From the NCBI GenBank assembly GCA_965603825.1, contig CBFDEM010000035.1, forward strand, positions 248,001 through 312,000: a stretch of DNA of 64,000 bases, in the 5' to 3' direction. A model generated the notes under the pieces. That model was not told the origin of the DNA. It worked only from the letters and a program-made list of their open reading frames with translations, and ran no database searches. The number at the start of each line of letters is the position of its first letter. Positions within the stretch are counted from its first letter, which is position 1. This document shows positions 7,428-58,220 of the stretch, one piece after another. The translations under genes and the position numbers were made by a program. The DNA is from Blepharisma stoltei ATCC 30299. Lineage: Eukaryota; Protista; Ciliophora.

Positions 7428-8873
7428 ATGGCAGAAGAGATAATAACGCTACAAGGGATAGTGCAGCCTAGCAAAATGGAAGCCAACGTGAATAGCGATT
7501 TAATTGAGTATATTATAGGTGAAGGAATTAGTGTAATTTACATATAGCTTGCTTGTTATTTGCCACACCTTCGTTTATTCCTAAAACCAGTAATAAAAGA
7601 AAAAAAATGAATTGATATACAAGAAATCTTTAATGTTCTAGATGACGTAGAGTTCTGACGAAATGTCAGAGAAGTAAAAGATATTTAGCTTGCAAATGGT
7701 TTTGAAACTGAGATAAATGTCAAGTTAATTAAGGCTGCGATATTTTTGTTCAGCAAAAATAAAATAACGTAGGAAATAAATAGGGTACCGTGGATAAAAA
7801 CATATTACAGCTCTTATGTGTCATTAGATTTTGAATCGAGGAGGAATGGAGTTAAACAAGACCCAAGTTTATTGCAGAAGTCATTTATATTGGTTAATAG
7901 GTTTCTGCCACTGAAGCTTATATCTTTATGGCTGGAGCATAACACCCCAAATTTTAAGCATATAGGAAGATTGACTCCTCATGAGTACTTATTCTTAGCT
8001 GCAAACACTTATGATAGAAGCAAACTTATTGAAGAAAGGCTTTTTTCACAGCCAGGTTTAATTATTGCAAAAGATTCAAATACAAATACATTTATCTTAT
8101 CAGAAACAGTTTCATCTAACCCTGATTTAGATAAAAGGCTTGAAAAAATCATGAGCAGCCAAATAAATGCTTCAAATGTACTATTTGAGCCTCAAGAAAC
8201 AATCAGTGATAGCCGATCTCCTTATAAATTAAAAAAATTTTTGAGAAAAAACAAAAATCAAGTCCAAAGTAAGCAAATGAACGAATTAAGAGTTTTATTG
8301 CAAGACCCAAATCTTTATGAACAGGTAAAGCAAACTTTATCTAAAAGTTCTTCTATTGTCAATAAATCGAGAACTAATGAAAATTTTTCCTATCAAAGAA
8401 TGAGAGCTACTTGTGGAATTTTGAATAGTGCAAGACCTTATACAGCTACAAATCCGTTAAAATCAAGATCTGAGAAAGATCTTAAGAGCAAAAGAATGCT
8501 ATCTGATTGTCAGTTGCCTCTTGATGAGCTTAATAGAACCGGAGGGCAACATCATAGATATATTGTAAGTTTCAGAGAGACAGACAAATCAAACTCATCT
8601 TCAAATTTAATTAAAGATTGCTCTGACAGCCAAATTAGGCCTTTTTCTGCATCTTCAACGGCAACATTAAAAGGAGCAAATCGTGTTGCTTCATCTAGGC
8701 CAATGACAGGTAGCACAAGACCCTTTACCGCGAATTCGCTTGCTAATACTTCTGTGTCGCTAACTCCTCTAATAATTTTTAAAATTATAGAGCGGTTTTT
8801 TGATAATAAAGTTTTTTACAAAGTAATATATATAAAATTAAAATCTTCACTAAAATTAATTTGCCAATCCTAA
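7428..8873 (+). CDS. Hypothetical protein with three tiny introns; 3' end uncertain, may extend to 9226
   Basis: ATG 7428 joins ORF 7818-8873 after removing three 15-nt introns and reading two TGAs as Trp; RPxTA/RPxSA low-complexity repeats. Confidence 0.7.
7533..7547 (+). other. 15-nt intron
   Basis: gtaatttacatatag; removes an in-frame TAG; A at -6. Confidence 0.8.
7674..7688 (+). other. 15-nt intron
   Basis: gtaaaagatatttag; removes an in-frame TAG; A at -6. Confidence 0.8.
7769..7783 (+). other. 15-nt intron
   Basis: gtaggaaataaatag; removes an in-frame TAG; A at -6. Confidence 0.8.
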
Positions 8874-9602
8874 TTGCACAATTGCAGGGAAAAAATTCAG
8901 GATAGCTTCTGGATAAAATTTTAATTGCTGCTCTAGATATCCATATGGATTTGTCTGAGCATCTTACGCTTTCAAGAGCCATAGCTTCATTCCAATTCTT
9001 TATTGGATGACCTTATCGCAAGAGCACTTCCCAAGCTGGGGTTCTTTCCATTTTGAAAAAGAATTATAACAGCATTTCGTCCCAATTTAAAGGAAAAGTA
9101 AGATTAAAAGATGAATCTTATCACCTGTGTTCATTGAAAGAAGCCGTAATTAGAGCATCTCAGCCATCTAAATCGACTGAATCAAAGAAAAGCTTGAGAG
9201 TAAAGATCAAAAAGTGGAAATTATAAATAAGAATAATTGTTTTGAGTAAGGCATATTAACAATATTTATCAAATTTTTCGTAATGAAGACCTAAGCAAAG
9301 CAATGCGTATAAAATTGCATTGGAATCAATTAAATAATTTTAGATTTCTCTTGCTATTTCGCAGCCTTACAAAATATGCAAGCTCATGAGCATTCTAAAT
9401 CTGAGCATTCGACATCTTTCGAGCTTTTAAATCGTTAAGAACTTCATCTTCAACTGCTATAGAGCTAGTTGCAGATATTTTCATAGATAGCCCATAATGC
9501 TGTTTATTGGAATACCCTTGAGCTATCTATAGAAAATATATTGCAAAATTCCATATTTTCGTGGCAATTTATAAAAACGTCATATTTTATAAAAAAGCAT
9601 AA

Positions 9603-10469
9603 ATGAAAATTACAGCAATTGGGCTTTGCTGTGTGGGGCTCATTTATTCGCTATTATCTTTGGCAGAATATACAATCATATTTCAACTCATCCCAATCTG
9701 GTATCAAGTGGGTAACCATTATACAAAAGGCGGAGTAATTTGGATCCTTATTTATCATTGCTTTATCACTCTTACAATAACTTCACATCTAAGATCAATG
9801 TTTAGCAATCCAGGATATACTCCTACTATGCAAGTCCCTGATTCAGTCCCACTAGAGCATTTGAGCTATTGTGATAATTGCCAACAATGAAAACCTCAAA
9901 GAACTCACCATTGCCACATATGCAAGAAATGTGTGCATAAGATGAATCACCATTGCCCTTGGATTTGTAATTGCATAGGAGCTAAGACTCAAAAAAGTTT
10001 TATATTGCTATTAGCGTACTCTTTTATTCTTAACGGCATAACGTTATTTATTATTCTCTCCTCTATTTGTTTTGCGATGCAAGCTCAAAATTATAATTTG
10101 GATGAAAATTTATTTATAATTTTGCTATCTGCTTTTATCTCACTGTTTGCAAGCTTATATCTTGTTTTTTCTGGATTTTTATTGTATGATCAATTACTGA
10201 TAATTATAAATAATCAAACAGAAATTGAAAAAAGGAACAATAAGATCGCAATTACAACTTCAATATATGAAAATTTCAAGACTGTTTTAGGAAGTCACAT
10301 CACTTCATGGTGAAATCCTTTAACAGAAATCCCAGACCCAGATTATACTGAGGAAATAGTTACTCAAATCAAAGTGGAAAAGTTTCAGATTAAGAGAATT
10401 TGGATCGTTTTGGGAATTTCCTTTGTCTTGATATTTTCTTTATTCGCAACAATAATCAACATGATCTAG
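9603..10469 (+). CDS. DHHC-family palmitoyl acyltransferase (NHHC variant)
   Basis: CDNCQQ-W(TGA 9888)-KPQRTHHCHICKKCVHKMNHHCPWICNCIG; multiple TMs; second TGA 10311; TAG 10467-10469. Confidence 0.9.
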
Positions 10470-10713
10470 AAATGCATGTTTATTTAAATACATATCTCAT
10501 CATAGAAATAAAATTAGTTTTACAATCATATAAGTTTTTTACTTTTAATAGATTATAATAAGCTCGATGCACTAAAGTTCATATCTTTTAAAGTCTCATT
10601 ATTCATTTAATTGTGCAAATAATGGACTGCTCTTGCTCAAATATTTTTAAGAAAATACTATAATAATTTATTCTATCTTTACTATAAAATGGGTGTGAGT
10701 GTTGCACTTCCAA

Positions 10714-10786
10714 GCAAGCGTAGTGTAGTGGTTATCACATCTGCCTAACACGCAGAAGGTCGTGGGTTCAATTCCCACCGCTTGTA
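10714..10786 (+). tRNA. tRNA-Val(AAC)
   Basis: Acceptor GCAAGCG/CGCTTGT, anticodon arm TCTGC-CTAACAC-GCAGA, T arm GTGGG-TTCAATT-CCCAC; 73 nt; followed by a T-run Pol III terminator. Confidence 0.95.
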
Positions 10787-11100
10787 TTTTTTATTGTTTT
10801 AGCTTGTTTGCATTTCTTATGCCAAATTTTAAATTCCAGCATTTATAACTTAATTTAAATATAGCTAATAGTTTTTTAGTAGTCCTGCTAAGAAAAGTGC
10901 ATTTAATGATTGATTAAACAATTAAATTCAAGCTGATTTAGATATAAAAAAATGCTGTATAAAATATCTTATGCTATTGAAGAGTTCTTTAATGCCAAAA
11001 TAAGTTTAAATTCGGATTACCGTGTGTGTTGATATTAATTAATTAAAATGATAATATTTGAGGTCTTATTAAGTTTCCGCATATAGTGCTGAAACCATTC

Positions 11101-11706
11101 TTACCAGATTATGCATTTTTCTTTTTTCTTCCCTGTTGCATGTATTTTATCATAAATTGCGAGCTTAATAGCCTCATCAAATACCCTCCGTATCCCCTCG
11201 CCAGTAATTGAGGAGCAGGGTAAATATCCTTGATATCCCAATTCATCTGCAAGTTTTTTTGCTTCCTCATCAGTCACAACGGATTCATTTGTTCGGCTAA
11301 GTTTTTCTCTTACTTCTTGATTATCAACTAGATCTTTGTTTGTACCAACCAGAATTATTGGAGTGTTGGGCGAATGAGATTTGATCTCTCGATGCCAATT
11401 ATTTCTTACTGATAAAAATGAACCTGGATTGACTAGTGAAAAGCAAAGCAAGAAAACTTTTGCCTTGGCATAGGAGAGGATTCTTAGTTTCTGGTGTCTT
11501 TGAGCTCCTCCAATATCGCATAATTCTATCGTTATTGGTAGGCTTTTTATTTCAATTTCAGCTAAATAATTATCTAAAACCGTAGGTGTATATGTTTCTG
11601 GCAGACTACGGTGTGTGTATTTTAGAATCATTGCTGTTTTGCCGGTATTCATGTCTCCGACGGCGACAAATGTCATATCAGGAGTTTTTGGTTCTTGAGA
11701 TTCCAT
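11101..11706 (-). CDS. Atypical Rho/Rac-family small GTPase
   Basis: GDMNTGKT P-loop, YTPTVLDNY effector loop, LRILSY, VFLLCFSLVNPGSF, CAAX-like CIIW. Confidence 0.9.
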   Translation of the reverse strand: MESQEPKTPDMTFVAVGDMNTGKTAMILKYTHRSLPETYTPTVLDNYLAEIEIKSLPITIELCDIGGAQRHQKLRILSYAKAKVFLLCFSLVNPGSFLSVRNNWHREIKSHSPNTPIILVGTNKDLVDNQEVREKLSRTNESVVTDEEAKKLADELGYQGYLPCSSITGEGIRRVFDEAIKLAIYDKIHATGKKKEKCIIW

Positions 11707-44784: not shown

Positions 44785-45231
44785 TTAAGCAGGCTCATGT
44801 CTATTCCCCTTTCCTTGTCTGCCTTTCTTGATGTCGCTCCTTTTCTTTTTTTCGAAAATTCTCTTATCCTTAACTTCATCCTCCTCTTTAAATATTTCAG
44901 TCTTTACTCTTATAATGACAGGTTTCTCAGCTTCATCAACCATCTCTTGAATCTTTTGTATAGCATCTTTTAAATTATGCTTTTGGTCCCTAAATCTTTG
45001 AGAAGTCACAAAAAGCTCTCCTTCTTTATTGATTTGGTTGTGATATAATTCTTTCAATCTCTCTTTTACATGCTCCGGAAGCCATGTTGCGTCATCGACT
45101 GAAAATCTAAGATCTACTTTTGTACTGACTTTATTTACAGCTTGGCCTCCAGGCCCAGAAGACCTGCAAAAAGAAGCTTCAAGCAGTTCTTGAGGCACTC
45201 TAATCATAAAGCGCCTGATAATCCTAAACAT
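44785..45231 (-). CDS. ICT1: ICT1/ArfB-type peptidyl-tRNA hydrolase (mitochondrial)
   Basis: MFRIIRRF presequence; RSSGPGGQAVNKVSTKVDLRF, WLP, INKEGEL, SQRFRDQ..N; basic tail. Confidence 0.9.
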   Translation of the reverse strand: MFRIIRRFMIRVPQELLEASFCRSSGPGGQAVNKVSTKVDLRFSVDDATWLPEHVKERLKELYHNQINKEGELFVTSQRFRDQKHNLKDAIQKIQEMVDEAEKPVIIRVKTEIFKEEDEVKDKRIFEKKKRSDIKKGRQGKGNRHEPA

Positions 45232-45234
45232 AAT

Positions 45235-46017
45235 ATGGAAGGGAGTGAAGTCAAGGTAAGAGTGATTCAATATTTTCTTCGAAACACTCCTGTAGGAGAA
45301 CTCAAAGAAGTCCTAAACGACTTAAAAGTGATCATTGGAGAAGAAATATTAGAGCAGGAAACAATTCAAGACACTCTTATTGAATGCTTAGCTTCTCATG
45401 GCGCAACTGTTTCTATTAATGACAGCCAAGCCATGCTCACTCTTCAAGGAAGAGCGGCAAATCGTTTCACCGATCCTAAGCTGTCAAAAAGCTTTATTTT
45501 CAACACCCATACTTTTGAAGCAGAATCTGTTGAAGAAATTGAGCCTCAAAACAGCAGAGCTCAAGCTATCCAATCCAAGCTTGACCAATATATCAGTCAG
45601 CATTTCTCAGAAACGGCCCAAGCCAGAGTTTTCAGCACAGAAGAAGGCTTTTCTATCTTTTTGGCTTCTCCAGTCTTGAACTTAAGAAATATGTGAACTG
45701 GAGAGTGGATCAGCAATTGAAAAATATCTGGCACAAAGTTAGAAGGAGACATCCATATAAGAGCTCACTATTTTGAAGAAGGAAACTTGCAATTGGACCA
45801 AAAGAAAGAATTCAGCAAAAATATTGTAGGAGATGACGACGAAGCTTTTTCCCAGGCTGTGTGTAGGGCTATTTTTGAGTTTGAAGACCAAGTGCATAGA
45901 GGGATGCATACTCTGTATGAGCAGATACCGCAAACCTGCTTTAAATCTATGAGAAGAGCACTCCCAGTCACCCATACCAAGTTTTCAGAAATCCATCGCA
46001 CCAAAATGCTGTCTTAA
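45235..46017 (+). CDS. F-actin capping protein alpha subunit
   Basis: FLRNTPVGELKEVLNDL, NM-W-TGEWISN-W (TGAs 45694 and 45718), AHYFEEGNLQL, FKSMRRALPVTHTKF. Confidence 0.92.
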
Positions 46018-51287: not shown

Positions 51288-52796
51288 TTAAATTTTTATA
51301 GCTTCAGATATTCAAGGGTGCTTTAGAGCTTTACTCGGGGTGAGTCGACTGTCTGGATCATACCGAAGACATTCTAATTATTTCTTACCTTCTAAAAAAT
51401 CTAAAAATCGTAAGTCAGTTGTTTTTATTTTATCAATCAATAAAACACTCCCAGGAGTTCTAGGCTTATTATATGATTTTTGGTAGAGAATAGGCTCGCC
51501 AAATAGATTGAAATATGAATCTTTCATTGATGATTGAGAAACTAAAGAATCAGGAGGCACGCCTAATAGCTCCATTATGCAGGAGAGCTGATCATGATCA
51601 TTTTCACCTGGAAATAGTGGGACCCCAGCAAAGCATTCAGCCAAAATGCATCCAAGAGATCACATATCTATAGGATAGGAATGCAAACATCCTAATATGA
51701 CTTCTGGCGCACGATAATATTTCACTTGCTTTATATTATATTTTTTATCAGAAGTAAAACATGATGATCCGAAATCTATGAGCTTTATTTCTGATTTTGA
51801 GTACATTTTCAGCAAAATATTTTTTGGATTTAAGTCACAGTGGATAATTCCGCATTTTCTCAGCAATTTCAATGCTCTTATTATCTGTTTTGCTATTCTT
51901 TTAATAATTCCCAATGGTAATCCCATAGTTTTGCTGGACTTTATCATAGTATATAAGCTTATATCCAGTATTTCCATGACCATACATATGTGTTTTCTAA
52001 ATAAGAAAAATTCATGCATCCTAACAATGTTCCACTCATCATTTTCGTCTTCGTCTTTTATAGCGTGAAGAATCTTAGCTTCTGCTACACCTTGCTTATA
52101 AATTTTCGGCTTACTTTTAACTACTTTTATTGCCACAATTTCTTTAGTCTTGTGGTCAAAACATTTACAAACTTGGCTGCAATTTCCTGCACCTATGATT
52201 TCTAATATCTCATATCTGTAGTTTAGATGATCTCCAGTTATTAAAATATAATTGGAATTTTCGTCATCAAATCCGTAGTTTTTTTCTGTTTTATTTGAAA
52301 ATATTTTTGACGCATTTATACCCAAGAAATAGACTTTGGGGTATTCTAAAATTTCTCCATGCTCATAAGGAGTCAAAGAGTTCATGTAGCGCTTCAAAGC
52401 TTGAGAAGATGCAATCGGAAACTTTAAATCTTCGCTAACTGGTTGGAAATCTTCAGGCCTTAAAATTGATGTTTTTCTTGATGCTTTAGAGATGTTAAGT
52501 TTATCTGGTGTATGATTAGGAGAGCTAGCTAAAGATTTATTGGTAGCATTGTTATATCTGGGTGATATATTTGATCTGTGGCTATTGTGTATATACGGAA
52601 GTGAAATGTCGTCTTTTCGTTTTCGTGACGAGTCTAAGATTGTAAACTTCTTGTCTGCTGCAATGGATAAAGCGTATTTGTGGAGTCTTGCTTTATTTGG
52701 GTCTTTCTCTATTAATAAGCTTAAGTTTCTTGAATTTCTCGGAGTAATAAAGGTATAAATTTTTACATTATCATTTCTTTGAGATGTGGACTTCAT
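51288..52796 (-). CDS. DYRK2/4-like kinase with degenerate motifs; one intron
   Basis: YEHGEILEY, GFDDENSNY..DHLNYRYE, HCDL, DFGSSC, YRAPEV, PIDM-W-SLG, ALKHP-W. Confidence 0.88.
51374..51388 (-). other. 15-nt intron
   Basis: gtaagaaataattag; removal restores FLEECLRYDPDSRLTPSKALKHPW. Confidence 0.9.
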
Positions 52797-53655: not shown

Positions 53656-54555
53656 TCATTTATTCTCATCTCCAAGATATTTTTCTGGGTCGATTTCGAG
53701 TTTTTCTAATATTTTATAAAAATATTCTTCAAATTCACTAGCGTCACAATTTAAGTTAAACCGAAGCTTTCGATAAGCCTCAAATTCATACTCAAATATA
53801 TCGCTTGGCTTTAAGTTATTTTTTTTATCTAAATCGCACATAGCACGAACTAATACTTGAAGTCTGAGCTTGGAAAGATTGAGGTGAATTTCTTCGTTAA
53901 ATTTGTAGGCTAAAACAACACAAGTGTATGCGACGAGTTTCCTATTTTGTCGGGTCACTACTCCAACGCAAAGCAGACGGTGAAAATAACGGAAAGCCAT
54001 TGCAAGTGTTCATACATCAATGTCCAGATCTTTGCAAAGCACTTGAATCAGGTTGTACTGCAAGTTCACGATTTTGCTTAAAGTTAGACCTGCGCCGAGT
54101 TGGGGATTTTTTATCTGAAATTCATAATTCAGCGCATCGGTCATTTGTGATGGCGGCATACACATGGGTGCATCAGACAAATCGACAGATGGATACTTAT
54201 CGGGAGAATAGTCATTTAAAAATTTTCTGTATGATTTTCTTTGGATTCTTAATTTTGCCCTATTCCTATTGAGCTCATTTTGCTGAACCAGTTCTTGACC
54301 TGTTCTTATATTGGAAAGAAAATCAAGTGCCTTTTTCAAAAATAATTTTTCCTCAGCTGTTTGAGCAACTCTTATTTTATCTTTATAAGAAAGTCTTCTA
54401 CTTTTGTGAGCAGAATCATCATTTGACTGGTAAGACTCCAAATCAGGTGAATGCTCTGTTTCGCTGGTTTTAATATCAGCATGTCAAAGCTTTTTGAACA
54501 AGTCTTGATTTAGGTCAAGTATGCCGTGTCTTCGAGTTCTTTGGACTTGCTGCAT
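53656..54555 (-). CDS. CABLES-like cyclin-fold protein
   Basis: LTLSKI...TLAMAFRYFHRL...QNRKLVAYTCVVLAYKF...EFEAYRKLRFNL matches the CABLES C-terminal cyclin box; two TGAs. Confidence 0.85.
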
Positions 54556-54773
54556 TTTGTTTATATTATTACAATAGCTGAAAGACCAATTTTACTTATC
54601 CAAAATAGATTCATATTAAATCCATCAGAAGTACCGAAAATTTGAACTAAACAATTGAAATTTTGTAATTAATTATAAATATAAGAAGGCTTATATAAAA
54701 GATTTGAATATTGCGCATAAAGAAATAATAGTAAAAAACTTATATTAATCAATTATGGTTTTATATCAATATT

Positions 54774-57488
54774 ATGGGTGATTATTCAAAACTTGCTGAA
54801 AATCATGAACCTGAAATACAAGCACTCGCCTTATCACCCGAAACACAAGCTGAACTTAATACAGGCTCTGATGGTCTTTCTTCTGAAGAAGTTATTCTTC
54901 GCTTTCAACGAGATGGCCCAAATCTCCTTCCAGAGAAGCGTGAAAAATCTTGTCTATGATACCTCGGCTACCTGTGGGGTCCCATTCCATTAATGATATG
55001 AGCTGCAATTACATTTGAAATTCTAAGAGACGCATGGGTGAGCTTTTTTGTCCTTTTAATACTTCAGTTTATTAATGGAATTATGAAATGATATCAAGAT
55101 CGAGGATCAAGAACTTCTATAAAGAAGCTCAAAACCAGCCTCCTCCCCCAAACCTATGTGAAACGAGAAGGGAGATGTGAACAAGTCGCATCAAAAGATC
55201 TCGTGATTGGAGACCGCATTAAAATTAAAATTGGAGACATTGCCCCAGCTGACTTAGTTTTGTGCGAAGGCAGCTGCGAGTTTGATTTGTCCTCGATTTC
55301 TGGAGAGAGTTTTCCAGTGAAAAAAGGAGAAGGACAAGTGGTGTATCAAGGCTCTATTTGTAAGAAAGGAGAAATGGAAGCGATCGTGCTGGCTACTGGA
55401 ATTAGGACGTTTTTGTATAAGTCAAAACAGAAATTTACAGTCAAAAGTGAGAAAACATCGTTTGAAAAAGCAAATTTTTGAATTTCAGTGTCTTTGCTAA
55501 TCGTCTCAACAATGCTGGTAGGAGTTATTTTGGCTGTCGTACTTGTGAGAGGAAATGATATTTTGGAATCCTTGTCTATTTGCACAGTTCTTTTGGTTGC
55601 TTCAATTCCCATCGCTATGCAGTTGGTATGCACAACTGTTTTGGCTGTTGGAGCCAATACTATGGCATCTAAAAAAACAATAGTAGCAAGATTGAATTCA
55701 ATAGAAAAGCTAGCAGGGATGAATTTGCTTTGCGTAAAAAAAACTGGGATGCTTACCAGAAATGATTTGACTGCTCAACAGCCTGTATTATTAAGAAGAT
55801 ATACAATAGAAGATATATTCTTATCAGCCGGCCTTGCCTCAAAAAGAACTCCAGGTTCCCAAGACCCTATTGATAAATGCATAACTGAGTATGCGACTCA
55901 AAAATGCAGAATTAATTTTCAAGCTTATGATGAGTTAGAATTCATACCCTTTGACTCGAAAAAGAAAAGATGTGAAGTTTTAGTCCAAAACACCCGCACT
56001 GGAGACAGATTCAAGTGCACTAAAGGCTCTCCACAAATTATCCTAGCAATGGCCCAAGATCCGGAGATAGAAAATGAAGTCACTAAACAAGTAGAAGAAC
56101 TCTCTGTAAGAGGATATAGGGCTATTGGCGTTGCAAGGACAAATAAAGATGGGAAATGGTCCATGATCGGACTAATTCCTTTATATGACCCACCAAGAGA
56201 AGATGCAAAAGATTCTATTGAAAAAGCATTTCAAATGCAAATTGGTATTAAATTGGTAACTGGCGACCAAATGGCTATATCAAAAGAAACTGCCAAGTTA
56301 TTAAATTTAGGAGACAAAATATATCATGGAGAAATTGTCTGCTTTGACACAACTGAAGAGCAAAAGGAAAATCTTGATAGTGTGCTGGATCATGCAGATG
56401 GATTTGCTGAGGTATTTCCAGAGCATAAATACATTATTGTGAAGCTTTTACAAGAAAAAGGATACAAAGTAGGAGTCATGGGCTCAAATGTAAATGATGT
56501 AGCTGCTCTTAAAAAAGCTGATGTAGGGATTGCTGTTTATGGAGCTCTTGATGCTGCGAAATCTGCGTCTGATATTATTTTAACCTATCCAGGACTTTCT
56601 GTAATAATGGCAGCCGTTCATGAAGCTAGAAAAACGTTCCAAAGACTGAATAATTATTATACCTACAGGATAGCTTGCACTTTGCAGCTTTTGCTTTTTT
56701 TTGCTACAACAATGATATTAATTAATCCTAGCAAAAAGCACTGCAACCAGGGAGATTGTGACAAAGTGCCGAATACCTTTGCATTGCCAGTGATATCTCT
56801 TGTAATAATCACAGTTTTAAATGATGGAACTATAATCTCTATTGCTTATGATAATGTAGCAGCCAACACAAAGCCTTATAAACTGAGTTTGTCAATGATA
56901 CTGTGGAATTCGCTTATTTTAGGAATCATTCCGTATGTATCTTCTGTTGCTTTATTATTAATGGCAATTGGGCATATGGATACTAATCATCCAAATAGAA
57001 TCCTCAAATTCTTTGGGATTGGGGCTTTGAATTATGGGGAGATTTTAACTATGATGTATCTTAAAGTATCGCTTTCAGATTATCTCACAGTGTTTGCTGC
57101 AAGGACTTCTGATTGGTTCTGGTCAAGCAAGCCTACAAAACTATTAATGTTTTCAGCTGCAGTAGCCATTTTGATAGCTACATTATTATCTGTTTATTGG
57201 TTCTTGCACTACTTTGAATGGACAGATGAGAAGAGTGATTTTCCAAGCATGAAGCCTATTGGATGGGGCACTGCAGGATTTGTATGGGGTTACAATATTG
57301 TTTTCTTCATATTCCAAGATTTGATCAAAGTATTTATTCATAAACAGCAGCAAGTGAGATCTCAGAATGAAAATTATTACCTTTCCAGTGGAGTCGTTGA
57401 TGAAAACTTTTTAGTATTCACTGGAAGTGTTCAAAGCAAAAATTCAATTGTAACAAAAAGATCAATGATCGCAGCAAATGAAGACTAA
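54774..57488 (+). CDS. P3A plasma-membrane H+-ATPase homologue lacking the catalytic Asp
   Basis: GLSSEEV..R..DGPN.LPEK, ASIPIAM, RLNSIEKLAGM, DPID, DPPR, VTGD, ADGFAEVFPEHKY, YRIA, LNDGTIISIAYD; phosphorylation motif reads CVKKTGM; four TGAs. Confidence 0.92.
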
Positions 57489-57773
57489 TATATGATAATG
57501 CAACAAAAACTAATAATTCATGTTTAATCAGCAAAAAGATATGATTTTATAAATATTAAGTAAATGGATTATTGCCTAGAGCATGCATAAATTTTTCTAA
57601 AATAAAATAATTTTAAATATCATATATGAATTTACATTCTAAATATTCATTTCTATCTGAAAAATCCTAATAAATATAGGAATTTTAGCATAGAAGCTCA
57701 GAGTTTTTCCTCTATGCATAAATAAATAATTAGCTATTATTCAAAATAATACAAAAAGCAATCTAAAAATTAG

Positions 57774-58220
<447 letters not shown>

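What the first reader, a model, noticed from the sequence alone, without database searches (positions are those of the whole stretch)
54774..57488. Full-length P3A proton-pump homologue with a dead catalytic centre (candidate pseudo-pump)
Seen: an intact 904-aa frame with all the membrane segments, but the invariant phosphorylation motif CSDKTGT reads CVKKTGM (Asp codon replaced by AAA, 55737-55739). The Mg-binding TGDGxND reads MGSNVND (56478-56498), and the A-domain TGES reads SGES (55299-55310). The membrane proton-acceptor Asp in LNDG (56823-56825), plus DPPR, TGD and YRIA, are retained. Established: every active P-type ATPase needs the DKTGT Asp to form the phosphoenzyme. Inference: coordinated loss of several catalytic motifs with no frame damage and a conserved transport site suggests repurposing, for example as a passive H+ leak, a pH or ATP sensor, or a regulatory subunit of H+-ATPase oligomers.
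Basis: partly seen in the sequence, partly recalled or inferred. Interest (0 to 1): 0.82.

Follow-up and report, generated by a model that had tools for sequence, protein, structure and literature searches.

The report
Conserved dead proton-pump paralog in Blepharisma
A ciliate keeps, transcribes and protects by selection a full-length copy of its plasma-membrane proton pump that lacks the aspartate every such pump needs to use ATP, so it is a working "pseudo-pump" with some non-pumping job, not a dying gene.

Summary
Window 54774-57488 (+) is one 904-codon frame. It has four in-frame TGA codons, read as Trp in the Blepharisma code, and ends in TAA. It is the only one of nine P3A H+-ATPase paralogs in this 41.5-Mb genome with all three motif changes:
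- CSDKTGT reads CVKKTGM (Lys322, AAA).
- TGES reads SGES.
- MTGDGVND reads VMGSNVND (Ser571).

It is not a pseudogene.
- RNA-like contigs of two runs cover only the gene, with 0 differences in X3, one in X11's main contigs, and no gaps. It therefore appears transcribed, unedited and intronless.
- A relative about 6% diverged has nine indel events in the flanks, eight upstream and one after the stop, and none in the CDS.
- A syntenic ortholog in a more distant Blepharisma-like genome (L036) is also intact and also reads KKTGM and MGNNVND.
- Against L036, dN is 0.22 while synonymous sites are saturated, so dN/dS is below about 0.1. That is 2-2.7 times faster than the canonical paralogs of the same species pair.

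Constraint is kept in the membrane, N and P domains and is weakest in the A domain. Function is inferred only: probably a nucleotide-binding, non-phosphorylatable partner or regulator of the active pumps. Degenerate P3A paralogs also occur in Stentor-like ciliates, but common origin is unresolved. The scan holds an unchecked note of another pseudo-pump, of Na+/K+ type, elsewhere in this genome.

The parts
54774..57488 (+). Complete coding sequence of the P3A-derived pseudo-ATPase (904 codons plus TAA); no introns
   Evidence: Translation. The Pfam families Cation_ATPase_N, E1-E2_ATPase, Cation_ATPase and Hydrolase hit its pieces. The same 904-aa protein is in the public protein collection as P0001. 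An RNA-like contig covers 54779-57510 with 0 differences and 0 gaps. AF2 model: pLDDT 85.9, pTM 0.83. Best fold match is AHA2 5ksd, TM 0.81/0.88.
54957..54959 (+). In-frame TGA read as Trp62; the other three are at 54999-55001 (Trp76), 55089-55091 (Trp106) and 55479-55481 (Trp236)
   Evidence: Trp76 and Trp106 align with Trp that is invariant in the paralogs. TGA and TGG interchange between the orthologs.
55299..55310 (+). A-domain motif SGES in place of TGES; the dephosphorylation Glu178 is kept
   Evidence: The ortholog reads TGET.
55731..55751 (+). Phosphorylation loop CVKKTGM in place of CSDKTGT. Lys322 (AAA, 55737-55739) replaces the phosphorylated Asp; Met326 replaces Thr
   Evidence: The ortholog reads CIKKTGM.
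56022..56036 (+). N-domain nucleotide-binding motif KGSPQ (canonical KGAPQ); Lys417 is kept
56187..56270 (+). P-domain motifs DPPR (56187-56198) and TGDQ (56259-56270), both kept
56478..56498 (+). Mg2+-site motif MGSNVND in place of TGDGVND. Ser571 (56484-56486) replaces the first Asp; Asn574 and Asp575 are kept
   Evidence: The ortholog reads MGNNVND.
56664..56675 (+). M5 motif YRIA with Arg632, which aligns with Pma1 Arg695
56817..56828 (+).
57444..57467 (+). C-terminal motif SIVTKRSM. The canonical paralogs L002-L005 have SIVTRRSM and the ortholog has SIITKRSL. It may be a regulatory phospho-site; that is inference.

Best explanation
SHOWN. The gene is a transcribed, intronless, full-length paralog of the Blepharisma plasma-membrane-type (P3A) H+-ATPases.
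- It has lost both carboxylates of the phosphorylation/Mg2+ site. The phosphorylated Asp is Lys322, and the first Asp of TGDGxND is Ser571.
- The loss is old. A syntenic ortholog in a distant Blepharisma-like genome has Lys and Asn at the same two places.
- Both copies have stayed intact under strong purifying selection (dN/dS below about 0.1).

FROM ESTABLISHED KNOWLEDGE. Without that Asp no aspartyl-phosphate can form, so the protein cannot run the E1P/E2P pumping cycle.

INFERRED (about 0.35 for this specific mechanism).
- The N-domain and P-domain nucleotide-pocket residues are kept: Phe393, Lys398/Arg399, Lys417, DPPR, TGD, Lys580, Asn574/Asp575.
- The M4 Pro, M5 Arg, M6 Asp and the C-terminal motif are also kept.
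- The A domain, which is needed only to dephosphorylate, is the least constrained part.
- From this I infer that the protein still binds ATP and sits in the membrane like a pump, but acts as a non-catalytic partner or regulator of the active P3A pumps. It could do so, for example, as a subunit of mixed oligomers, with Lys322 standing in for the lost Mg2+/Asp charge pair.
For: Motifs and uniqueness among the nine paralogs:
-.
- P3A is the closest kind: Pma1 and AHA2 at E 1e-97 to 1e-92, against 7e-41 for MgtA. The predicted fold matches AHA2 at TM 0.81/0.88.

Transcription:
- In X3 one 2732-nt contig spans 54779-57510 with 0 differences and 0 gaps.
- In X11 two contigs (54784-55798, one difference; 55857-57529, none) are bridged by 118-nt contigs and have no gaps.
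- Both runs have zero depth in both intergenic flanks.

Close relatives, organisms B and C, about 6% diverged:
- All 9 indel events lie outside the CDS.
- 7 of the 9 listed CDS substitutions are synonymous.

Distant ortholog, L036:8609-11323:
- It has 905 intact codons and reads CIKKTGM and MGNNVND.
- Most neighbouring genes match in the same order.
- aa identity is 72%, dN 0.218, pS 0.787 (saturated).
- Canonical orthologs of the same two organisms have dN 0.08 and 0.11.

Neutral simulation:
- 0.2% of replicates stay stop-free at 6% divergence, and none at 10% or more.

Domain pattern, as columns invariant in 29 canonical sequences that are changed in the dead clade:
- A domain 23 of 45.
- C-terminal P domain 30 of 90.
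- N domain 12 of 46.
- M5-M10 4 of 43.
Against: - No biochemical data exist. Loss of activity is deduced from residues only.
- The runs are only guessed to be RNA, and contig depth cannot give expression level.
- Codon 322 could not be read in organisms B and C, because 192 of the difference rows were not shown.
- dS is saturated against L036, so dN/dS is a bound and not an estimate.
- Nothing here shows contact with the canonical pumps.
- In yeast, substitutions at the equivalent Asp378 and Asp634 misfold and drag wild-type Pma1 into aggregates (PMC3692421). Co-assembly could therefore be harmful rather than useful unless it has been compensated.
Confidence: 0.8

Rival explanations
1. Stand-alone sensor, in the manner of a transceptor. 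The protein binds H+ at the M6 Asp and ATP at the N/P cleft, and reports cytosolic pH or energy state to other proteins without touching the active pumps.
For: The proton-site residues and the nucleotide-pocket residues are both conserved. The N, P and M domains are constrained while the A domain is relaxed.
Against: There is no extra output domain; length and architecture equal those of a plain pump. No partner is known. The data cannot separate this from the regulator model.
Confidence: 0.2
2. Passive proton conduit. The membrane domain has been repurposed as an uncoupled H+ leak or channel.
For: M5-M10 is the best-kept part relative to the canonical invariants, with 39 of 43 kept, including Asp684 and Arg632.
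Against: The N and P domains, which a mere channel would not need, are also strongly constrained (76-85% identity between the orthologs with saturated dS). In P-type pumps the gates are driven by phosphorylation; this point is established knowledge, not tested here.
Confidence: 0.1
3. Still an active pump, using an unconventional nucleophile or mechanism.
For: Most other P-type signature residues are kept: Lys323, Thr324, Gly325, TGD, DPPR, Asn574, Asp575 and Glu178.
Against: There is no acidic residue in or next to the loop in either ortholog (CVKKTGM and CIKKTGM), and the Mg2+-ligand Asp is lost as well. X3's RNA-like contig spans the codon with no difference from the DNA, so no editing restores Asp.
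Confidence: 0.04
4. A decaying pseudogene that merely has not yet been hit by a stop codon or a frameshift.
For: Several catalytic motifs are lost. dN is 2-2.7 times that of the canonical paralogs.
Against: - The ORF is intact in two lineages whose synonymous sites are saturated.
- Neutral simulation leaves no stop-free copies at 10% divergence or more.
- Against the close relative, indels occur only outside the CDS.
- The gene appears transcribed.
- The same Lys is conserved in both orthologs.
Confidence: 0.02

Closest known systems
P3A plasma-membrane H+-ATPases (yeast/Neurospora Pma1, plant AHA2)
   Same: - Same length and the same four-domain, ten-helix architecture.
- Best sequence hits: E 1e-97 to 1e-92.
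- Best structural hits: AHA2 5ksd, TM 0.81/0.88.
- Same M4 Pro, M5 Arg and M6 Asp, and the same KGxP, DPPR and TGD motifs.
   Different: It lacks the phosphorylated Asp (Lys322) and the first Asp of TGDGxND (Ser571). TGES reads SGES. The A domain is strongly diverged. It cannot form the phosphoenzyme that defines the family.
Laboratory Pma1 mutants at Asp378 and Asp634 (dominant-lethal alleles; PMC3692421)
   Same: Both positions named there as dominant-lethal sites, D378 and D634, are substituted in the natural protein. The mapping comes from the alignment. Lys474, Asp560 and Arg695, the other three sites listed, are kept.
   Different: The yeast mutants misfold, stay in the ER and aggregate with the wild type. 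The ciliate protein has been kept by selection alongside eight canonical paralogs, so it must fold or be handled differently.
P4-ATPase (flippase) modules of alveolate guanylate cyclases (P4GC; PMC13466520)
   Same: These are also alveolate P-type ATPase modules in which some lineages have lost the DKTGT Asp and/or the A-domain Glu, while the predicted fold is retained.
   Different: - They belong to a different subfamily (P4, not P3A).
- They are fused to a cyclase that gives an obvious output, whereas this protein stands alone.
- The Blepharisma P4GC itself is described there as highly conserved.
- Here the A-domain Glu is kept and the Mg2+-site Asp is lost.
Degenerate P3A paralogs on gene-dense, probably Stentor-like ciliate contigs (P0042, P0045, P0047, P0054-P0057, P0061, P0138, P0139)
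   Same: - Same family.
- The same motifs are eroded: SGEV/TGEx, CCDKTGI/M, TGSKVSD.
- Intact ORFs on gene-dense eukaryotic contigs.
- They group with the target in trees.
   Different: - Most of them keep the Asp. Those that lack it have Gly, Asn or Ser, never Lys.
- The grouping joins long branches and is unstable when either group is removed.
- Shared derived residues do not exceed a control.

Membership tests
P3A H+-ATPase (functional P-type ATPase) | A, P, N and ten-helix M-domain architecture, with closest similarity to Pma1/AHA2 | tested here: met
   Pfam domains. PDB sequence search. AF2 model and Foldseek.
P3A H+-ATPase (functional P-type ATPase) | Phosphorylatable Asp in DKTGT | tested here: not met
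   Lys322 (AAA) in CVKKTGM. It aligns with Pma1 Asp378 and with the DKTGT Asp of all eight paralogs.
P3A H+-ATPase (functional P-type ATPase) | Mg2+-site motif TGDGxND | tested here: not met
   The motif reads MGSNVND. The first Asp is Ser571; Asn574 and Asp575 are kept.
P3A H+-ATPase (functional P-type ATPase) | A-domain TGES with the catalytic Glu | tested here: inconclusive
   SGES in the target and TGET in the ortholog. The Glu is kept, but half of the canonical-invariant A-domain columns are changed.
P3A H+-ATPase (functional P-type ATPase) | Membrane proton site (M6 Asp, M5 Arg, M4 Pro) | tested here: met
   Asp684, Arg632 and Pro279 are present. 39 of 43 canonical-invariant M5-M10 columns are kept.
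P3A H+-ATPase (functional P-type ATPase) | ATP-driven H+ transport through an aspartyl-phosphate intermediate | not testable with these tools
   Needs biochemistry.
Pseudoenzyme (conserved catalytically dead homolog) | Loss of the catalytic residue, shared by orthologs | tested here: met
   KKTGM in both the window and the syntenic L036 ortholog.
Pseudoenzyme (conserved catalytically dead homolog) | Purifying selection after the loss | tested here: met
   dN 0.218 against saturated pS 0.787. Indels lie only outside the CDS, and 7 of 9 listed substitutions are synonymous. Simulation.
Pseudoenzyme (conserved catalytically dead homolog) | Expression | tested here: met
   Gene-bounded, gap-free contigs in two RNA-like runs of the same organism and one of a related organism, with no intergenic cover. 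The RNA nature of the runs is the tool's guess.
Pseudoenzyme (conserved catalytically dead homolog) | Demonstrated lack of catalysis together with a demonstrated other function | not testable with these tools
   Needs assays.
Processed or decaying pseudogene | Frame disruption, silence, or dN/dS near 1 | tested here: not met

The most novel reading that the evidence does not exclude
Heterotrich ciliates (Blepharisma and Stentor-like lineages) share an old family of P3A-derived pseudo-pumps in which the catalytic centre was lost stepwise: first the Mg2+-site Asp and the TGES Thr, later the phosphorylated Asp. These proteins serve as nucleotide-binding, non-catalytic subunits of mixed proton-pump oligomers. 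They would be a P-type counterpart of the non-catalytic nucleotide-binding subunits of F- and V-type ATPases.
Probability: 0.2. Interest if true: 0.8.

Novelty: new variant of a known kind. Interest (0 to 1): 0.62.

Why it matters
P-type ATPases are defined by their aspartyl-phosphate. I found no description of a naturally conserved, stand-alone member that has given it up. The nearest case is the eroded flippase module fused to alveolate guanylate cyclases.

- A P3A copy that selection has kept for a long time without the Asp shows that the pump scaffold has a second, non-pumping use.
- Nature has also found a way round the misfolding and dominant lethality that the same substitutions cause in yeast Pma1.
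- It gives a ready-made natural probe for three questions: what ATP binding alone does to a P-type ATPase, how proton pumps oligomerise and are regulated, and how pseudoenzymes arise among transporters.
- Asp-less P3A paralogs turned up in at least four separate lineages of the public data, so the phenomenon may be wider than one ciliate.

Tried and rejected
- Fetching the ~6%-diverged ortholog. I tried to reach the contig of organisms B/C through an exact look-up of the neighbouring 122-aa protein. Nothing is on record. Codon 322 and a full dN/dS at unsaturated distance could therefore not be read, and only 9 of the CDS differences were printed.
- Careful IQ-TREE search. The careful search (C20 PMSF, 45 rows) did not finish in two 300-s calls. 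I used the quick PMSF tree and two leave-one-group-out trees instead.
- Common origin of the Blepharisma dead clade and the Stentor-like degenerate clade. Support is SH-aLRT 99 under LG+G4 and 84 under PMSF with the motif columns dropped. Each group moves when the other is removed. Identical derived residues (5 of 61) do not exceed a long-branch canonical control (4 of 61). I leave this unresolved.
- Cryptic 15-nt introns that keep the frame. Rejected: the RNA-like contigs are collinear with the DNA, and no 5-residue inserts appear against the paralogs.
- RNA editing that restores Asp. Rejected: X3's contig spans the codon with 0 differences, and no difference is listed there for X11.
- Bacterial promoter/terminator scan. 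Irrelevant for a ciliate.
- Motif check of the other P-type ATPase loci of the genome. About half of the loci (11 of 21) gave no long frame because only one strand was translated. Not pursued.
- Literature searches for a described P3A pseudo-pump or for ciliate P3A work found none.
- How the protein was searched. It was searched in pieces between the TGA codons, or as the public collection's own full-length entry P0001. In scripts TGA was translated as Trp, which is the organism's code and not a repair.
Full report
**1. What is at the coordinates**

Window 54774-57488 (+) translates as one frame of 904 codons.
- The bacterial table shows four internal stops. All four are TGA (54957, 54999, 55089, 55479), and the frame ends in TAA.
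- The window lies on contig 35 of a 41.46-Mb, 64-contig assembly. Public annotation names the paralogs in that assembly Blepharisma stoltei. In this assembly TGA behaves as a Trp codon, as follows.
- Two of the four TGA codons align with Trp that is invariant in all paralogs.
- TGA and TGG swap freely between the two orthologs described below.
- The same 904-residue protein is already in the public protein collection (P0001).

The pieces between the TGA codons hit Cation_ATPase_N, E1-E2_ATPase, Cation_ATPase and Hydrolase.
- The best solved relatives are the P3A pumps Pma1 and AHA2 (E 1e-97 to 1e-92). The next kind, MgtA, scores 7e-41.
- An AlphaFold2 model built on 68 aligned relatives is confident: pLDDT 85.9, pTM 0.83, low only at residues 1-11 and 868-888.
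- The model matches AHA2 (5ksd) at TM 0.81/0.88 and rmsd 3.2 Å.

**2. The observation**

- AAA at 55737-55739 is Lys322, in CVKKTGM.
- MGSNVND lies at 56478-56498, with Ser571.
- SGES lies at 55299-55310.
- GAT at 56823-56825 is Asp684 of LNDG.
- DPPR, TGD and YRIA are present.

The genome holds eight other P3A genes (L002-L009, 43-57% identical over the C-terminal 668 residues). All eight read TGES, SDKTGT and MTGDGVND. The target alone deviates.

The alignment to Pma1 has no gaps around the motifs. It puts Lys322 on Asp378 and Ser571 on Asp634.

These residues are kept:
- Glu178 of the TGES position.
- Lys323, Thr324 and Gly325.
- Phe393, Lys398 and Arg399 (canonical PFDPxxKR; here PFDSKKKR, with the motif's fourth residue Pro changed to Ser in both orthologs).
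- Lys417 (KGxP), DPPR and TGD.
- Asn574, Asp575 and Lys580.
- The M4 Pro279, the M5 Arg632 and the M6 Asp684.

**3. Is it alive?**

(a) Transcription.
- Four runs of one study are flagged by the tool as probable RNA. Their assemblies are 24-32 Mb, and each holds 98-100% of the gene's 31-mers.
- I laid two of them on 54400-57900.
- In X3 a 2732-nt contig covers 54779-57510 with 0 differences and 0 gaps.
- In X11 two contigs (54784-55798, one difference; 55857-57529, none) are bridged by 118-nt contigs and have no gaps.
- Depth is zero in both intergenic flanks in both runs, while the neighbouring genes have their own contigs.
- This is the pattern of transcripts. It also shows there are no introns, including the 15-nt in-frame kind that I recall from Stentor and Blepharisma; that recollection was not checked here.
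- The X3 contig spans codon 322 unchanged, so there is no editing there.
- The RNA label is the tool's guess, and contig depth says nothing reliable about level.

(b) A close relative.
- Organism B (DNA) carries the locus on a 22-kb contig with 202 differences over 54400-57552.
- Its nine indel events all lie outside the CDS. Eight fall within about 180 nt of upstream spacer (54573-54754) and one lies 17 nt after the stop.
- Organism C has gene-bounded contigs with 25 and 140 differences and no gaps.
- Only nine CDS differences were printed. Seven of them are synonymous.

(c) A distant ortholog.
- The exhaustive profile search returned a 248-residue fragment that is 78% identical (P0194).
- Its contig (L036, Logan SRR24908292) carries a complete 905-codon gene at 8609-11323, with ten TGA = Trp codons and a TAA stop.
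- Most neighbouring genes match the window in the same order. These include both immediate upstream genes and the zinc-finger gene downstream, so L036 is the positional ortholog.
- It reads CIKKTGM, TGET, KGAPQ, MGNNVND, YRIA and LNDG. The Asp-to-Lys change and the loss of the Mg2+-site Asp therefore predate the split of the two organisms.

| Pair (B. stoltei vs the L036 organism) | aa identity | pN | dN | pS |
|---|---|---|---|---|
| Dead copy: target vs L036 | 72% | 0.189 | 0.218 | 0.787 (saturated) |
| Canonical I: L002/L003 vs P0018 | 90.5% | 0.075-0.077 | 0.08 | 0.72-0.77 |
| Canonical II: L004/L005 vs P0015 | 85% | 0.103-0.108 | 0.11 | 0.81 |

- P0018 and P0015 come from the same sample as L036.
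- The dead copy thus evolves 2-2.7 times faster at non-synonymous sites. It is still far from neutral: dN/dS is about 0.1 or less if dS is at least 2.4.

(d) Simulation.
- Random substitutions with the window's base composition leave 0.2% of copies stop-free at 6% divergence.
- None remain stop-free at 10% or more.

Together these results reject a decaying pseudogene.

**4. Where the constraint lies**

| Domain | Identity, dead pair | Identity, canonical pairs | Canonical-invariant columns changed in the dead clade |
|---|---|---|---|
| M1-M2 | 0.81 | 0.91 | 11 of 29 |
| A | 0.59 | 0.88-0.91 | 23 of 45 |
| M3-M4 | 0.71 | about 0.9 | 6 of 24 |
| P (N-terminal part) | 0.85 | 0.96-1.00 | 6 of 18 |
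| N | 0.76 | 0.88 | 12 of 46 |
| P (C-terminal part) | 0.78 | 0.94-0.97 | 30 of 90 |
| M5-M10 | 0.75 | 0.80-0.91 | 4 of 43 |

- The last column counts columns changed in at least one of the two dead orthologs, out of 301 columns invariant in 29 canonical heterotrich-type sequences. In total 61 are changed in both and 32 in one.
- The part that exists to dephosphorylate is the most relaxed.
- The membrane core, the nucleotide pocket and the rest of the P domain are still held.
- The C-terminal SIVTKRSM motif is shared with the canonical paralogs L002-L005 (SIVTRRSM) and with the ortholog (SIITKRSL).

**5. How it most likely works**

- Shown: the protein lacks both carboxylates that hold the phosphate and the Mg2+. 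It has lacked them for a long time and is kept by selection.
- From established knowledge of P-type ATPases: no aspartyl-phosphate can form, so no E1P/E2P cycle and no pumping are possible.
- Inferred: the N/P cleft residues are constrained, so nucleotide binding is probably still used. Lys322 may replace the lost Mg2+/Asp charge arrangement.
- I favour, at about 0.35, a non-catalytic, ATP-binding partner or regulator of the active P3A pumps. Solved fungal Pma1 structures are hexamers (titles).

Rivals:
- A stand-alone pH/ATP sensor (0.2).
- A passive H+ path (0.1). This is weakened because a channel would not need constrained N and P domains.
- Residual unconventional catalysis (0.04).
- A pseudogene (0.02).

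One difficulty for co-assembly comes from yeast. Substitutions of Asp378 and Asp634, the two positions replaced here, are dominant lethal. The mutant protein misfolds, stays in the ER and aggregates the wild type (PMC3692421). The ciliate protein must have escaped this.

**6. Relatives with eroded motifs**

- Among the 120 closest public proteins, eight intact metagenomic sequences read SGEV/TGEx, CCDKTGI/M (one has Gly for Asp) and TGSKVSD. They are P0042, P0045, P0047, P0054-P0057 and P0061.
- For the three I looked up, the genes sit on gene-dense eukaryotic contigs with ciliate-type neighbours.
- Canonical sequences of the neighbouring clades are annotated Stentor coeruleus.

Trees place the target and its ortholog as their sister, but the evidence is mixed.
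- Support is SH-aLRT 99 under LG+G4, and 84 under C20-PMSF with the motif columns removed.
- With more sampling a 13-member clade also takes in P0137, P0138 (Asp to Asn; same sample as P0042) and P0139 (Asp to Ser).
- All of these are long branches. Each group moves when the other is left out.
- Identical derived residues shared by the two groups (5 of 61) are no more than for a long-branched canonical control (4 of 61).
- I therefore leave open whether there was one origin or parallel erosion.

Asp-less P3A representatives also occur in three unrelated parts of the tree (P0195, P0203, P0255/P0275). The tree needs at least four changes of this label.

**7. Comparison with what is known, and novelty**

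- By descent and fold this is a P3A ATPase.
- By the family's defining chemistry it is not one: the DKTGT Asp and the TGDGxND Asp were tested and not met. I file it as a P3A-derived pseudo-ATPase.
- The closest described case is the flippase module of alveolate guanylate cyclases. Some lineages of it have lost the DKTGT Asp or the DGET Glu (PMC13466520). That is a different subfamily, fused to an output domain.
- Four literature searches found no description of a stand-alone P3A pseudo-pump or of ciliate P3A pumps. The library is incomplete, so this is absence of evidence only.
- I rate it a new variant of a known kind.

**8. Limits**

- There is no biochemistry.
- The RNA status of the runs is guessed.
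- Codon 322 was not read in organisms B and C.
- dS is saturated against L036.
- The careful tree search was unfinished.

Noticed in passing
L031:6001-8301, L033:4099-6720, L034:6001-8535, L039:4001-6490, L040:4001-6412: Intact P3A paralogs with eroded catalytic motifs (SGEV, CCDKTGI/M or Asp replaced by Gly, Asn or Ser, TGSKVSD) on gene-dense ciliate-like metagenome contigs. One sample (SRR32481641) carries two different ones, P0042 and P0138.
   Followed up: partly
P0195, P0203, P0255, P0275: Further P3A-like cluster representatives without the DKTGT Asp (Asn or Ala instead). They are scattered over unrelated parts of the tree, so the loss has happened at least four times in public data.
   Followed up: partly
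window 54957, 54999, 55089, 55479 and L036:8609-11323: TGA and TGG interchange at Trp positions between the two orthologs (target TGA at codons 62, 76, 106 and 236; L036 TGA at ten codons). This is direct evidence that both organisms read TGA as Trp.
   Followed up: yes
L036:7434-8243 and L036:11342-11791 versus window 54556-54773 and 57489-57824: The ortholog's locus has an RRM-domain gene directly upstream and a ribosomal L27e gene directly downstream. Both are missing at these places in the window. The CapZ-alpha gene (window 45070-46017) lies inverted and closer in L036 (5189-5974), and window 51378-52796 is inverted relative to L036:3711-5072. These are local rearrangements within otherwise conserved synteny.
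   Followed up: no
L004:922-3525 and L005:922-3528 (G000 contigs 10 and 33): In two canonical paralogs the long frame starts only at ...PNMLPEK, so the N-terminal ~60 residues are missing from the frame. This may be an upstream intron or a different start.
   Followed up: no
L009 (G000:C12:647053-652026): The most divergent canonical paralog keeps DKTGT, TGES and TGDGVND but has LLSDKTGT, ILNDFT and YRISL and a long acidic/lysine-rich C-terminal tail. It has a long branch (0.5-0.8 changes per column).
   Followed up: no
If that is right, pseudo-pumps are not confined to the P3A family here.
   Followed up: no
window 57825-58220: The 131-aa C2H2 zinc-finger gene just downstream is 98% identical over its first 45 residues to the L036 organism's copy. 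That is far more conserved than the ATPase next to it.
   Followed up: no
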